A stretch of DNA of 63,582 bases, the filler included, from Reticulomyxa filosa (lineage: Eukaryota > Protista > Foraminifera): assembly GCA_000512085.1 (NCBI GenBank). It is 10 parts of 10 records of this genome, joined end to end, with 100 filler letters (N's around TTAATTAATTAA, not from the genome) between each part and the next. Parts side by side here need not be neighbours in the genome. Positions count along the whole stretch, not along the records: positions 1 to 22,137 come from ASPP01002699.1; 9 more parts are not named here. One strand, 5' to 3'. Position 1 is the stretch's first letter. Each line of letters opens with the position of its first letter. A model generated the notes under the pieces. The model was not told where the DNA came from. It was given only the letters and a program-made list of their open reading frames with translations, and made no database searches. The position numbers and the translations under genes were made by a program. Of this stretch, positions 7,144 through 16,272 are shown one piece after another.

Positions 7144-8473
7144 TTAAGGCAAAGATCGCACGTTACTTATTTCGGCTTGAAGTTGTTCTTGTTGATATTT
7201 TTCAAATGACTTAAGCTTTCTTGGTGCCTTATGAAAACGTTGAGGAGTGTTTGAAAAGGGTTTTTGAAAAAGCCAATTTAAGGTGGCATAGCGACGAGGG
7301 GCTTCTCTTTGGGTTTGTCTCAACGTTTCTTGTGCCTTTCATCCAGATTATATATTGTTTAGTAAAGACTGTTAAAGGTAGAAAGTAAAAAAAAGATGAG
7401 AAAAAACGCACCAATTTAGGTGAGGACCATACAATATGTGCATTAGCCTGATTTTGCGAAGGGCTTGTTGGTAGTGTATATTTTGGGTCTAGTGGATTGA
7501 GATGACGATGAGTTCGAAACATTTTTTTAGTCCATGGTTGCGTTCCAGCAATGTCACTGATAAAATTGGGATCTTTTGGATTATCCCGCTTCCATTTGAT
7601 AGGGTTAGCAACTGCCCCTGCAACGTCGTCTGTTTTGAGAGACGTGAATATCTTGTTGTGACCTCGCATTCGTTCCGATTTGTTTGCCCGGGAACCCTCA
7701 ACTGGGCCAATGATATTGACACTAGCAATTGGTTTGGAGCCAATATTCTTTCCACGTGTAAGAGAAGTTTTTCGATAATTATCATATTGATATACCGGTT
7801 CTAGCGGATTTGTGCATCGAGAACTACGAAAATAATTGCATCCATTTTGATCATTATTGATATCACGCACATTCAATGAATTTTTCTGTTCGCATAGCCC
7901 AATTTTTTATTTTTCATTAATTAACAATACAAACAAACTCACTCCATAATATATATGTGGCAAACACATTTTGGGAGGATACACCAAACTAACGTTGGTG
8001 GACCACTTGCGATGGTTCATTTTCCATCCTGGACAAGATCCTTCTATATCCCCATGGTACATGATATTTTTGGATGTCTGACATTGGCTTTGTATTGATT
8101 TTTTAGGCTGGCAGCCCTCAATATCACTTATGTTTAGTGTATTTCGACCAGGTTTTGGAGGAGTGTTCAATCTCTGGTTCAATACACTCAATGGAACACT
8201 CGGATATTGATATACTGGCTCCAAAGGGTTTGTTTGCCGATTGCCAAAATGTCCTTTTGGTTTTGGATGTGCTCCTTCAATATCGCTGATATCATAGGCA
8301 TACTTAGGTTTGTTTGGAAATGATCGGCGCTTTAAGCATATATCGCCGGTCGTGAGGATTCGATTAGGATTTTTTTGCGGAAATTGCAGTGACCCTGTAC
8401 GATCTACTTTCATCACAAGATACTTTTTTATGTCTTTCAGTAATATTAAGATGCTTCCATGTAATACTTCCAA
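7144..8473 (-). CDS. multi-exon repeat protein with alternating (L)xxxDIEG(A/C)xP and TNPL(E/D)PxY motifs; start uncertain
   Basis: ORFs 7907-8473 and 7229-7876 contain DISDIEGAHPK, TNPLEPVYQYP, LNISDIEGCQPK, HGDIEGSCPGW, TNPLEPVYQY, KTDDVAGA, ISDIAGTQP and LNPLDPKY. A last exon ..QAEISNVRSLP* ends at 7144. Confidence 0.7.
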
Positions 8474-13502: not shown

Positions 13503-14523
13503 ATGTCCGATATGGTTGAATCTTTAAGAAATAAGAAATTGATAGTGATTGGATTGATGAGTGGGACATCAATGGATGGAATTGATTGTGCACTTTTACA
13601 AACAGTTTTTTTTTTTCACAACATGCAATCAAAATGAAACAACTAAGCCAAGCCAAGACAAAACAAAACCAAACAAAAAAAAAAGGACGGGGAAACAATA
13701 AAGTTACAACAACCAAATTATTATGAATGCTATGAGTACAGCCGAGAGTTTAAAGAGCGGTTGAAAAAGATATTGGGAAAGACGAATCGAACAGAGGAAT
13801 TGACAAGTGTGGAAACCGAGCTGACAAGACAGCACATGGAAGCAGTGAAGAAATTTCTGAGAAAGTATAGGTTATCAATGGACGACATCGATTTGATATC
13901 ATTTCATGGACACACGATATATCACGAATCCAAAGATAACATGAGCAAAGCCGAAAAAAAACCCCACGAGATACCGTCAGACGTGATAATAGGGCGCAAT
14001 TGCGCATCTTGGCAAATCGGAAACGGTGCACTTTTATCGAAGTTGACAGGGAAGCCAGTGGTGTATAATTTGAGGAAAAATGACATTGTGCACGGCGGAC
14101 AGGGTTGTCCATTGGTGCCATTGTATCACGCGGCCATTGCAAAGTATGTAAAACAGGACCACCCAATGGCATTCACATTTCCGGTTGTATTTGTGAACAT
14201 TGGCGGAGTTGCCAATGTTACATATGTGGACGTGACCACGGACAAGGAAAAGGGTTCCATCCAAACATTGATTGCGTTTGATTGCGGGCCTGGCAATGCC
14301 ATCTTGGACGACTTTGTGACCCAAGTGAGTGGCAATCGACACTCCTTCGATCCCAACGGCTTGCTTTATTGCTACAAAGGCATCCACGATATACGTTTCG
14401 ATGTCGTTAACAAGTTTCTGCAACACAAGTTTACTACCAACAATTTATCATCACAAGGCTTGCCAAAGTCTTTAGATCGTAATCAATGGCATTCATTTAT
14501 TTTTAATCTTTTAAAAAATTATG

Positions 14524-14556
<33 letters not shown>

Positions 14557-14935
14557 TTTATGCACAAGCAGCTACAATTGCAGAATGCACTGTTCAATCC
14601 ATTGTTCATAGTGTAGATTACTTTGGACTTGCAAAGGAAATCAAACCCATTCCCAAAACTTGGCTCTTGTGTGGCGGAGGACGGCACAACCGCTTCTTCA
14701 AAGAACGCATTCACACCGTTTTGAACGACAAGTACTCACCGCTGCTTCGCGACATCTCGGTACTTAACATTGACGACTTTGGGCTCAATGGGGATGCCGT
14801 CGAGGCACAGTGCTGGGCTTCTTAGGAGCTCGAGCCGTCAATCGCTTACACTTGAGTCTTCCCACCACTACCACTGTTCCCTCTCCTGTCACTGGAGGAG
14901 TCTTTGCTTTCCCTTCTTCCAATGCAAAACTTTAA
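13503..14935 (+). CDS. anmK: anhydro-N-acetylmuramic acid kinase (AnmK/levoglucosan kinase family); exon 1 13503-13604, exon 2 13686-14935 with a 1-nt frameshift at ~14820
   Basis: Exon 1 IVIGLMSGTSMDGIDCALLQT is spliced to DGETI. Internal motifs: FHGHT, GGQGCPLVP, NIGGVANVT, AFDCGPGNAILD, PKSLDR, CGGGRHN, GDAVEAQ. The conserved tail (F)LGARAVNRLHLSLPTTTTVPSPVTGG lies in the shifted frame and ends ..NAKL*. Confidence 0.93.
14526..14555 (+). repeat. (AAT)10 coding microsatellite, poly-Asn insertion inside anmK
   Basis: Direct reading: YD-N10-VY. Confidence 0.9.
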
Positions 14936-15326: not shown

Positions 15327-16272
15327 TTAATCCAACAAAAACATTCTCGACGCAATATCTTTGACTAACCAGTCCACTCCCTCTCTTAACCCCTTGCCTG
15401 TGACCGCACTGCAAGCTTGAACATAGTAATGTCTGGACTTTTCCAATTTTTTCAACTCCAAAGTTTCGACAATGTCCTTGACATCAAGAGCGCCACTCAA
15501 ATCTTGTTTGTTGGCAAGTATTAACAAAGTCGCGCCTGCCAATCTCTATTTCACACACATACGTATGCATTTGGTTTATTGCATTGATATGTGTTTCTTT
15601 TTTTTAAAAAAAAAAAGGAACGGAGCGGAAACAAAAAAAATCATAATTGAAATTGTTTGAATCTATTCCGATAATTGCATTTTTTGTATTAGCATTGAAT
15701 GAAAGGATTATATTTAACTTCCTCTTGCAACAAACTGTGCAACTCTTTTTTGCACAGAGCCAATCTTCGTTTGTCGGCACTGTCAATCACCCAAATCACA
15801 CCATCAGTCGCCTCAAAATAATTTTTCCAATAAGATCGTATGGTTTGTTGTCCACCAACGTCCCAAATGTTCAATTTGTAACTTTATTTATTTTTGTTTG
15901 TTCAACAAAAAAAAAGGGGGCAAAAGCACGAAAGAACTTTTCTTTTTGCTGATGAAACAAATAAAAAAAAACAAGTTGACGGTTTATATGTTAATCTGCT
16001 GCAAAAAAAAGAATACAGTGGATGTCACTTACTCAGAATATTCTAATGTGCGGATGGTGAAACCCAAGGTGGGCGCAATCTTGGTTATGTCTTCACCGTT
16101 AAACCGCATGACTACTGTCGTTTTGCCTGCGTTATCTAAACCTCTACGCCAAACACAATCGTGTTTGCACTAAATGGGAATGAAATAAAGCAAAACCAAA
16201 CACTTACAGCATCAATATTCGCATTTCCTTCTCTTTTCTTTTCAATTTTTTCAAAATAGCCAACAGACCCAT
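15327..16272 (-). CDS. ARL2: ADP-ribosylation factor-like GTPase 2 (4 exons: 16272-16208, 16143-16033, 15881-15719, 15545-15327)
   Basis: [96 protein letters not shown]. These are ARL2-diagnostic sequences. Confidence 0.96.

What the first reader, a model, noticed from the sequence alone, without database searches (positions are those of the whole stretch)
14808..14935. Hidden anmK C-terminus behind a 1-nt frameshift ends in a peroxisomal PTS1-like -AKL
Seen: the ORF stops at EAQCWAS*. Adding one T at TGG GCT T(T)C TTA gives WAFLGARAVNRLHLSLPTTTTVPSPVTGGVFAFPSSNAKL*, matching the conserved AnmK tail plus a short extension ending AKL. Established: (S/A/C)-(K/R/H)-L is the PTS1 consensus. Inference: the acquired enzyme may have been retargeted to peroxisomes, giving a compartmentalised amino-sugar salvage route I am not aware of being described. 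The frameshift is most simply a homopolymer sequencing error; a real lesion or recoding are alternatives.
Basis: partly seen in the sequence, partly recalled or inferred. Interest (0 to 1): 0.8.

Follow-up and report, generated by a model that had tools for sequence, protein, structure and literature searches.

The report
Foraminiferan AnmK gene, broken tail, AKL end

Summary
The window is Reticulomyxa filosa contig ASPP01002699.1, and the gene is RFI_02801, whose annotated model ends ...EAQCWAS.

**The break**
- The main frame stops at TAG 14823-14825.
- The -1 frame from 14822 encodes the missing AnmK C-terminus. It matches NCBIfam NF007141 positions 335-367 (E 7e-6) and aligns without gaps to the homologues.
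- The tail is as conserved as the body of the protein: 45.5% against 41.2% identity.
- A single missing base in the Tyr/Phe codon at 14820-14821 explains it.
- Nothing supports recoding: there is no slippery site and no RNA structure.
- I could not get reads. An error in a very fragmented draft is the likeliest cause. A recent real lesion is not excluded.

**The -AKL ending**
- The restored end ...GGVFAFPSSNAKL fits the PTS1 consensus.
- None of 191 bacterial AnmK sequences ends this way, and the chance rate is about 0.2%.
- No orthologue, Pex5 or partner enzyme of this species could be examined, so peroxisomal import is a hypothesis at roughly 20-25%.

**Context**
- Bacterial anmK in eukaryotes is already reported in ticks, Naegleria and ciliates.
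- Amino-sugar steps inside peroxisome-derived glycosomes are also described.

Interest is low to moderate.

The parts
13503..13604 (+). Exon 1 of anmK (RFI_02801): MSDMVESLRNKKLIVIGLMSGTSMDGIDCALLQT. It carries the N-terminal phosphate-binding motif. The AnmK profile starts at about residue 13-15, so there is no N-terminal presequence.
   Evidence: NF007141 positions 4-25, E 2.4e-7; annotated protein P0001.
13605..13685 (+). Spliceosomal intron (GT..AG) holding in-frame TGA and TAA stops. The deposited model uses the acceptor at 13652 (48 nt). The acceptor at 13685 (81 nt) removes the 11-residue low-complexity insert PRQNKTKQKKK and joins ...LLQT|DGETIKL, which matches the invariant T-D-G of the homologues.
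   Evidence: (invariant T34 and G47 separated only in P0001). The mean R. filosa intron is 87 nt. The choice of acceptor is inferred from homology, with no RNA evidence.
13686..14819 (+). Body of the AnmK coding sequence in frame 0. It includes HGHT, FDCGPGNA and CGGGRHN motifs, a eukaryote-style poly-Asn tract (about 14526-14553), and ends ...EAQCWA.
   Evidence: Pfam PF03702 134.6 bits, cut-off 24. NF007141 238 bits, E 1.2e-70, profile positions 39-335. Invariant columns. Solved AnmK and LGK structures at E 1e-13 to 1e-16.
14820..14825 (+). The break. A two-base codon remnant TC (14820-14821) stands where homologues have Tyr or Phe. As deposited, frame 0 reads TCT TAG, so the annotated protein ends ...WAS*.
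14822..14932 (+). Hidden C-terminal 37 codons in the -1 frame: LGARAVNRLHLSLPTTTTVPSPVTGGVFAFPSSNAKL. They correspond to the second half of the last long helix, the invariant TT(G) turn and the final strand of AnmK.
   Evidence: (NF007141 positions 335-367, E 7e-6). (gap-free alignment). (45.5% identity). (AF2 model of homologue P0065: helix 316-329, 337-340, strand 350-352).
14924..14935 (+). GCA AAA CTT TAA = Ala-Lys-Leu-stop, a PTS1-like C-terminal tripeptide. It is encoded across an A4 run and a T3 run.
   Evidence: 0 of 119 and 0 of 72 bacterial homologues end in [SAC][KRH][LM]. Chance is about 0.2%.

Best explanation
RFI_02801 is a nuclear, intron-bearing gene of Reticulomyxa filosa for an AnmK-family sugar kinase of alphaproteobacterial type. 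AnmK uses ATP to open the 1,6-anhydro ring of anhydro-N-acetylmuramic acid and phosphorylate it.

In the organism the gene is most likely intact and about 450 codons long. The deposited draft contig lacks one base in the conserved Tyr/Phe codon at 14820-14821. The annotated protein is therefore cut 38 residues short, in the middle of the last helix.

The true product ends ...TGGVFAFPSSNAKL. It has no N-terminal targeting sequence. By default the enzyme would act in the cytosol on muropeptide sugars released from digested bacteria. The -AKL end makes Pex5-dependent import into peroxisomes a real but unproven alternative.

Shown here:
- the gene identity
- the break
- the conserved tail
- the AKL ending

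Inferred:
- that the break is an assembly error
- the substrate
- the compartment
For: - **Identity and context:**
- **All closest relatives are Alphaproteobacteria** at 32-37% identity. The gene sits on a long, unsupported branch near Rickettsiales-like rows.
- **The catalytic and nucleotide motifs are intact**.
- **The break lies exactly at profile position 335.** The tail continues at 335-367 without any gap.
- **The tail has not decayed.** It is 45.5% identical to homologues against 41.2% for the body, and it is open to a stop at the natural end. The frame was therefore under constraint until very recently.
- **The truncated product would be crippled.** A high-confidence model of homologue P0065 (pLDDT 95.6) shows it would lose 33 ordered residues, including half a helix, the invariant TT turn and the last strand. 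That outcome is unlikely for a gene otherwise kept intact.
- **The assembly is a very fragmented draft:** 50,809 contigs, N50 3,609 bp.
- **From memory, not verified here:** the project used 454 plus Illumina reads.
Against: - No read, transcript or second assembly could be inspected, so a real one-base deletion is not excluded.
- The most common residue at the break is Tyr (TAC). Restoring it needs an A that is not part of a homopolymer, which weakens the 'homopolymer miscall' argument.
- R. filosa carries no second copy in its annotated proteome. No orthologue is known, so the gene could be dispensable and decaying.
- The pieces score below the NCBIfam equivalog cut-off: 238 bits for the body and about 293 summed, against 352. 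The substrate is therefore not assured.
Confidence: 0.62

Rival explanations
1. The one-base deletion is real. The gene is a very recent pseudogene, or one broken allele or nuclear lineage, of a horizontally acquired, dispensable anmK. The AKL end is never translated.
For: - The deposited sequence is the only direct evidence, and it shows the break.
- The gene is single-copy and lineage-restricted as far as the searches reach.
- The missing base need not lie in a homopolymer.
Against: - The downstream frame is still open to the natural end and is more conserved than the body.
- There is no second lesion anywhere in about 450 codons, and all motifs are intact.
- The draft quality of the assembly makes a consensus error more likely a priori.
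Confidence: 0.22
2. The intact protein is imported into peroxisomes through its C-terminal -AKL (PTS1, Pex5), placing anhydroMurNAc phosphorylation inside the organelle.
For: - AKL matches the strict PTS1 consensus and sits at the very end, followed by TAA.
- The eight residues after the last predicted strand (FPSSNAKL) contain no acidic residue and include Pro, Ser and Asn, so they look like a free tail.
- None of 191 bacterial AnmK sequences ends this way, and the chance rate is about 0.2%.
- Foraminifera express Pex5, Pex7 and other peroxins (10.1101/2022.07.20.500910).
- There are precedents for PTS1 on bacterium-derived enzymes and for amino-sugar steps in glycosomes (PMC8629394, PMC7909634).
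- There is no competing N-terminal signal.
Against: - The evidence is a single tripeptide in a single species.
- From general knowledge, only a minority of proteins with a consensus tripeptide are peroxisomal.
- Conservation cannot be tested, because there are no orthologues.
- Pex5, MurQ and other pathway enzymes of R. filosa could not be examined.
- The tripeptide is read only after assuming one assembly error, and it is itself encoded across A4 and T3 runs.
- Tail length is within the bacterial range.
- The one eukaryotic AnmK that has been localised, in a tick, is not peroxisomal.
Confidence: 0.22
3. Programmed recoding. The ribosome slips -1 at GCU-U, or UAG is read through or reassigned, to make the full-length protein from the sequence as deposited.
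For: A -1 slip after GCT would give exactly ...WAFLGARA....
Against: - There is no X XXY YYZ slippery heptamer in frame 0 (TGC TGG GCT TCT TAG).
- The 124 nt downstream fold no better than shuffles (z 0.11).
- Reading UAG as sense gives QELEPSIAYT*, which has no similarity to AnmK.
- No intron can restore the frame without deleting conserved residues.
Confidence: 0.02

Closest known systems
Bacterial anhydro-N-acetylmuramic acid kinase AnmK (PF03702; solved structures 3CQY, 3QBW, 8BRE)
   Same: - Same family and domain order.
- The SGTSxDGID, DxGPGN and GGGxxN motifs are conserved, as are the C-terminal helix, TT turn and final strand.
- The closest sequences are alphaproteobacterial.
   Different: - Only 32-37% identical, and below the NCBIfam equivalog cut-offs.
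- It has a spliceosomal intron, a poly-Asn tract and a roughly 20-residue insert.
- Its C-terminal tail is about 5 residues longer and ends in AKL.
- It is encoded in a eukaryotic nucleus.
Horizontally acquired anmK in other eukaryotes: ticks (bioRxiv 10.64898/2026.03.13.711553), anaerobic ciliates with murQ (PMC13198582), Naegleria (PMC9928731)
   Same: A bacterial anmK integrated into a eukaryotic genome and 'eukaryotised' by gaining an intron. The proposed role is handling bacterial cell-wall sugars.
   Different: - The acquisition is independent. The tick donor is reported as Chitinophagaceae (the source text spells it 'Chitinophagacea'), whereas this gene is alphaproteobacterial in type.
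- None of those reports mentions a PTS1.
- Tick AnmK localises near the oocyte plasma membrane.
Fungal levoglucosan kinase (PDB 4ZXZ, 4YH5)
   Same: A eukaryotic member of the same fold and family. It matches the query at E 4e-15.
   Different: The R. filosa protein scores best against the AnmK equivalog profiles, not against LGK. The substrate is untested.
PTS1-targeted enzymes of bacterial origin and peroxisomal or glycosomal sugar metabolism (Entamoeba myo-inositol dehydrogenase, PMC8629394; T. brucei glycosomal UDP-GlcNAc pathway, PMC7909634, PMC2414269)
   Same: A cytosolic-type or bacterium-derived sugar enzyme carrying a C-terminal [SAC][KRH][LM] tripeptide.
   Different: Those cases have localisation experiments, and their PTS1 is conserved among relatives. 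Here there is only one sequence, read through a frame break.

Membership tests
AnmK / levoglucosan kinase family (Pfam PF03702) | Domain match above the curated gathering score | tested here: met
   134.6 bits against a cut-off of 24 for the main ORF. Exon 1 on its own gives 21.2 bits at profile positions 3-21.
AnmK / levoglucosan kinase family (Pfam PF03702) | ASKHA nucleotide and phosphate motifs (N-terminal SGTSxDGxD, DxGPGN, GGGxxN) | tested here: met
   D25, G26, D28, F243, D244, G246-N249 and G375-G377 fall in invariant columns of alignment A1.
AnmK / levoglucosan kinase family (Pfam PF03702) | Complete C-terminal helix, TT turn and strand in one reading frame | tested here: not met
   As deposited, the frame ends at profile position 335. 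Positions 335-367 are encoded in the -1 frame.
AnmK equivalog (NCBIfam NF007141, same function as bacterial AnmK) | Whole-protein score above the curated equivalog cut-off | tested here: not met
   238.3 bits for the body, plus 30 and 25 for the two end pieces, against a cut-off of 352. Substrate identity is therefore inferred, not assured.
AnmK equivalog (NCBIfam NF007141, same function as bacterial AnmK) | Kinase activity on 1,6-anhydroMurNAc | not testable with these tools
   This needs an enzyme assay.
PTS1-bearing peroxisomal matrix protein | C-terminal tripeptide [SAC][KRH][LM] directly before the stop | tested here: inconclusive
   AKL-TAA is present at 14924-14935. It is translated only if the break at 14820-14821 is not real.
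PTS1-bearing peroxisomal matrix protein | Accessible, non-acidic upstream residues (-4 to -12) | tested here: inconclusive
   FPSSNAKL follows the last strand predicted in homologue P0065 and has no Asp or Glu. No PTS1 predictor was available.
PTS1-bearing peroxisomal matrix protein | Pex5 receptor and peroxisomes present in the organism | not testable with these tools
   The species' own genome is not held. Other foraminifera express Pex5, Pex7 and Pex19. No paper was found that reports peroxins of R. filosa.
PTS1-bearing peroxisomal matrix protein | Signal conserved in orthologues | not testable with these tools
   No orthologue above 38% identity turned up in the word search, the JGI metagenomes or the short-fragment search.
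Programmed -1 ribosomal frameshift site | Slippery heptamer X XXY YYZ and a downstream stimulatory structure | tested here: not met
   There is no heptamer in frame 0. The downstream fold has z 0.11.

The most novel reading that the evidence does not exclude
Reticulomyxa filosa has fitted a horizontally acquired alphaproteobacterial AnmK with a new PTS1 (-AKL) and imports it into peroxisomes. The first committed step of salvaging peptidoglycan-derived anhydroMurNAc from eaten bacteria would then take place inside the organelle. That would be a peroxisomal function not described so far, and another example of foraminiferal peroxisomes with unusual content.
Probability: 0.2. Interest if true: 0.55.

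Novelty: new member of a known kind. Interest (0 to 1): 0.25.

Why it matters
**Practical.** The public protein RFI_02801 is truncated by 38 residues and probably carries 11 spurious intron-derived residues. Comparative or structural work that uses it would inherit both errors.

**Biological.**
- This is a further, independent case of a bacterivorous protist keeping a bacterial peptidoglycan-recycling kinase, alongside the reports for Naegleria, ciliates and ticks.
- If the AKL end were shown to drive import, it would extend the known metabolic range of protist peroxisomes. It would also give a compact example of how a three-residue change re-addresses an acquired enzyme.
- That step is at present only a testable hypothesis.

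Tried and rejected

- Own genome: not held. I could not search for a second copy, Pex5, MurQ, NagA/B or other PTS1 enzymes.

**Searches for a second copy of the locus, or for orthologues**
- JGI metagenomes by protein: 264 pattern hits, none related.
- JGI metagenomes by a 28-nt exact pattern just upstream of the break: 0 hits.
- Word search with the last 89 residues, to catch short assembled fragments: no candidate.
- Main word search: only P0001 from R. filosa, with the next hit at 35-38% identity and bacterial in length.

**Readings considered and rejected**
- Intron rescue of the frame. The conserved residues EAQCWA-x-LGARA are contiguous in the DNA. The only GT..AG nearby is 16 nt long and leads into the wrong frame.
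- UAG as a sense codon. It gives QELEPSIAYT*, unrelated to AnmK.
- -1 or +1 programmed frameshift. There is no slippery site and no structure, and a +1 shift leads to the wrong frame.
- Contamination by a bacterium. The gene has an intron with stops, a poly-Asn tract and intron-split eukaryotic neighbours.

**Uninformative analyses**
- GC by codon position of the tail: only 37 codons, and Pro/Thr/Ser/Gly-rich.
- Phylogeny: no supported sister group. R. filosa sits on a long branch with deviant composition.

**Literature**
- No paper was found reporting peroxins or PTS1 proteins of R. filosa.
- The genome paper (Curr Biol 2014) is not held.
- No supplements are held for the foraminiferal peroxisome preprint.

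Full report
**What the window is.**
- The word search returned a 100% identical protein, P0001. It is "hypothetical protein RFI_02801 [Reticulomyxa filosa]", named anhydro-N-acetylmuramic acid kinase by UniRef, 424 aa, on a 22,137-nt contig.
- The contig is ASPP01002699.1 of assembly GCA_000512085.1.
- The surroundings are eukaryotic:
  - an Arf-like GTPase split into four exons on the minus strand
  - a flavokinase
  - an intron-split Rce1-like protease
  - AT-rich intergenic DNA at 25-35% GC, against 43% in the gene
- The gene's first exon (13503-13604) is followed by an intron containing TGA and TAA in frame. The coding sequence also holds a poly-Asn tract.
- This is therefore an integrated nuclear gene, not bacterial contamination.

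**The observation.**
- In frame 0 the codons GCA CAG TGC TGG GCT TCT TAG (14805-14825) end the protein at ...EAQCWAS. The deposited model ends there too.
- One base back, the frame reads TTC TTA GGA ... GCA AAA CTT TAA (14819-14935), giving FLGARAVNRLHLSLPTTTTVPSPVTGGVFAFPSSNAKL.
- The main ORF matches NCBIfam NF007141 to profile position 335. The 41-codon piece matches positions 335-367 of 370 with E 7e-6.
- I built a read-through with X at the break. It aligns to 40, and then 119, bacterial homologues with no gap across the junction.
- At the X column the homologues have Tyr in 108 of 119 and Phe in 9 of 119.
- The remnant T-C (14820-14821) can be completed to TAC as well as TTC.

No other copy of the locus turned up in JGI metagenomes or among short protein fragments. 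The argument is therefore indirect.
1. The tail is 45.5% identical to homologues, against 41.2% for the rest of the protein, and it is open to a stop at the natural end. Constraint on this frame lasted until very recently.
2. There is no other lesion in about 450 codons, and all family-invariant motif residues are present.
3. A confident model of the homologue P0065 (pLDDT 95.6) places the break in the middle of helix 316-329. The truncated product would lack 33 ordered residues, including the invariant TT turn and the last strand. It would probably be non-functional.
4. The assembly is a very fragmented draft with 50,809 contigs and an N50 of 3.6 kb. From memory, it was built partly from 454 reads.

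My estimates are roughly 0.7 for an assembly error, 0.2-0.25 for a recent real deletion, and 0.02 for recoding. Recoding is disfavoured on four counts:
- There is no slippery heptamer.
- The downstream RNA folds no better than shuffles (z 0.11).
- UAG read as sense gives an unrelated peptide.
- No intron can restore the frame.

**What the gene is.**
- It belongs to Pfam PF03702 well above the cut-off.
- It is closest to AnmK equivalog profiles but below their cut-offs, so the substrate is inferred.
- Solved AnmK and levoglucosan kinase structures match at E 1e-13 to 1e-16.
- The 80 best matches among species-representative genomes are all Alphaproteobacteria, at 31-37% identity. They include Hyphomicrobiales, Rhodospirillales, Rickettsiales and Micavibrio.
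- In a quick tree the R. filosa protein sits on a long branch nearest Rickettsiales-like rows, without support and with deviant composition.
- The likely role is that of a phagotroph feeding on bacteria: phosphorylating 1,6-anhydroMurNAc released from peptidoglycan. The same proposal has been made for Naegleria (PMC9928731) and for anaerobic ciliates that acquired anmK and murQ (PMC13198582). A tick anmK of bacterial origin has been shown to be active (10.64898/2026.03.13.711553).

**The AKL end.**

In favour:
- AKL is a canonical PTS1 tripeptide. From memory, human SCP2 and HSD17B4 end in AKL.
- It sits directly before TAA.
- None of 119 word-search homologues or 72 GTDB homologues ends in [SAC][KRH][LM].
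- The chance of such an ending, given this protein's composition, is about 0.2%.
- The eight residues after the last predicted strand (FPSSNAKL) are non-acidic and rich in Pro, Ser and Asn.
- There is no N-terminal presequence.
- Foraminifera express Pex5 and other peroxins.

Against:
- It is three residues in one species.
- The tail length, 11 residues after GG, is within the bacterial range. The median is 6, and 12.6% of homologues are as long or longer.
- From general knowledge, many proteins with a consensus tripeptide are not peroxisomal.
- The tripeptide is reached only by assuming an error at one site while trusting the A4 and T3 runs that encode it.
- I could not test conservation, the presence of Pex5 in R. 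filosa, or a PTS1 on partner enzymes.

I put peroxisomal import at about 0.2.

**Comparison with what is known.**
- Acquired anmK in eukaryotes is documented.
- Myo-inositol dehydrogenase, whose eukaryotic forms trace to lateral transfers from bacteria, carries a PTS1 in Archamoebae and acts in Entamoeba peroxisomes (PMC8629394).
- Amino-sugar nucleotide synthesis inside glycosomes is documented in T. brucei (PMC7909634, PMC2414269).
- A peroxisomal AnmK itself has not been described in what I could search.
- The finding is a new member of a known kind, plus an annotation correction, with a modestly interesting and cheaply testable targeting hypothesis.

**Verdict.** Interest is 0.25. The most novel reading not excluded is a peroxisomal AnmK, at probability 0.2 and interest 0.55 if true.

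Noticed in passing
window 13605-13685 (+): The deposited gene model splices 13605-13652 (48 nt) and so keeps an 11-residue low-complexity insert (PRQNKTKQKKK) between the invariant Thr and Asp-Gly. An alternative GT..AG intron at 13605-13685 (81 nt, close to the species' mean of 87 nt) joins ...LLQT|DGETIKL, exactly as in the bacterial homologues.
   Followed up: partly
window 16272-16207 and 16142-16038 (-): The annotated Arf-like GTPase gene (152 aa, window 15327-16109) appears to lack its first exon. [22 protein letters not shown] lies at 16272-16207. The P-loop exon GLDNAGKTT... lies at 16142-16038, so its start is outside the annotated span. Together with the exons at 15877-15719 and 15545-15330, these would make a full-length Arl protein.
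   Followed up: partly
window 7229-8473 (-): A 375-aa annotated gene with no Pfam match carries at least four copies of a short motif, x-(I/G)-(S)-D-I-x-G-x-x-P (YDISDIEGAHPKPK, LNISDIEGCQPKKS, MYHGDIEGSCPGWK, NFISDIAGTQPWTK). It is an unexplained repeat protein.
   Followed up: no
window 14526-14553 (+): A run of AAT codons (poly-Asn) sits inside the AnmK coding sequence, at a loop that is short in the bacterial homologues. A further insert of about 20 residues (NMSKAEKKPHEIPSDVIIGRNC) follows the HGxT motif. Both are eukaryote-style expansions in an acquired gene.
   Followed up: no
window 14826-14834 (+): Overlapping SacI and XhoI palindromes (GAGCTCGAG) lie directly after the stop of the deposited frame. 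They encode the conserved G-A-R-A of the hidden tail, so they are natural coding sequence, not a linker.
   Followed up: yes
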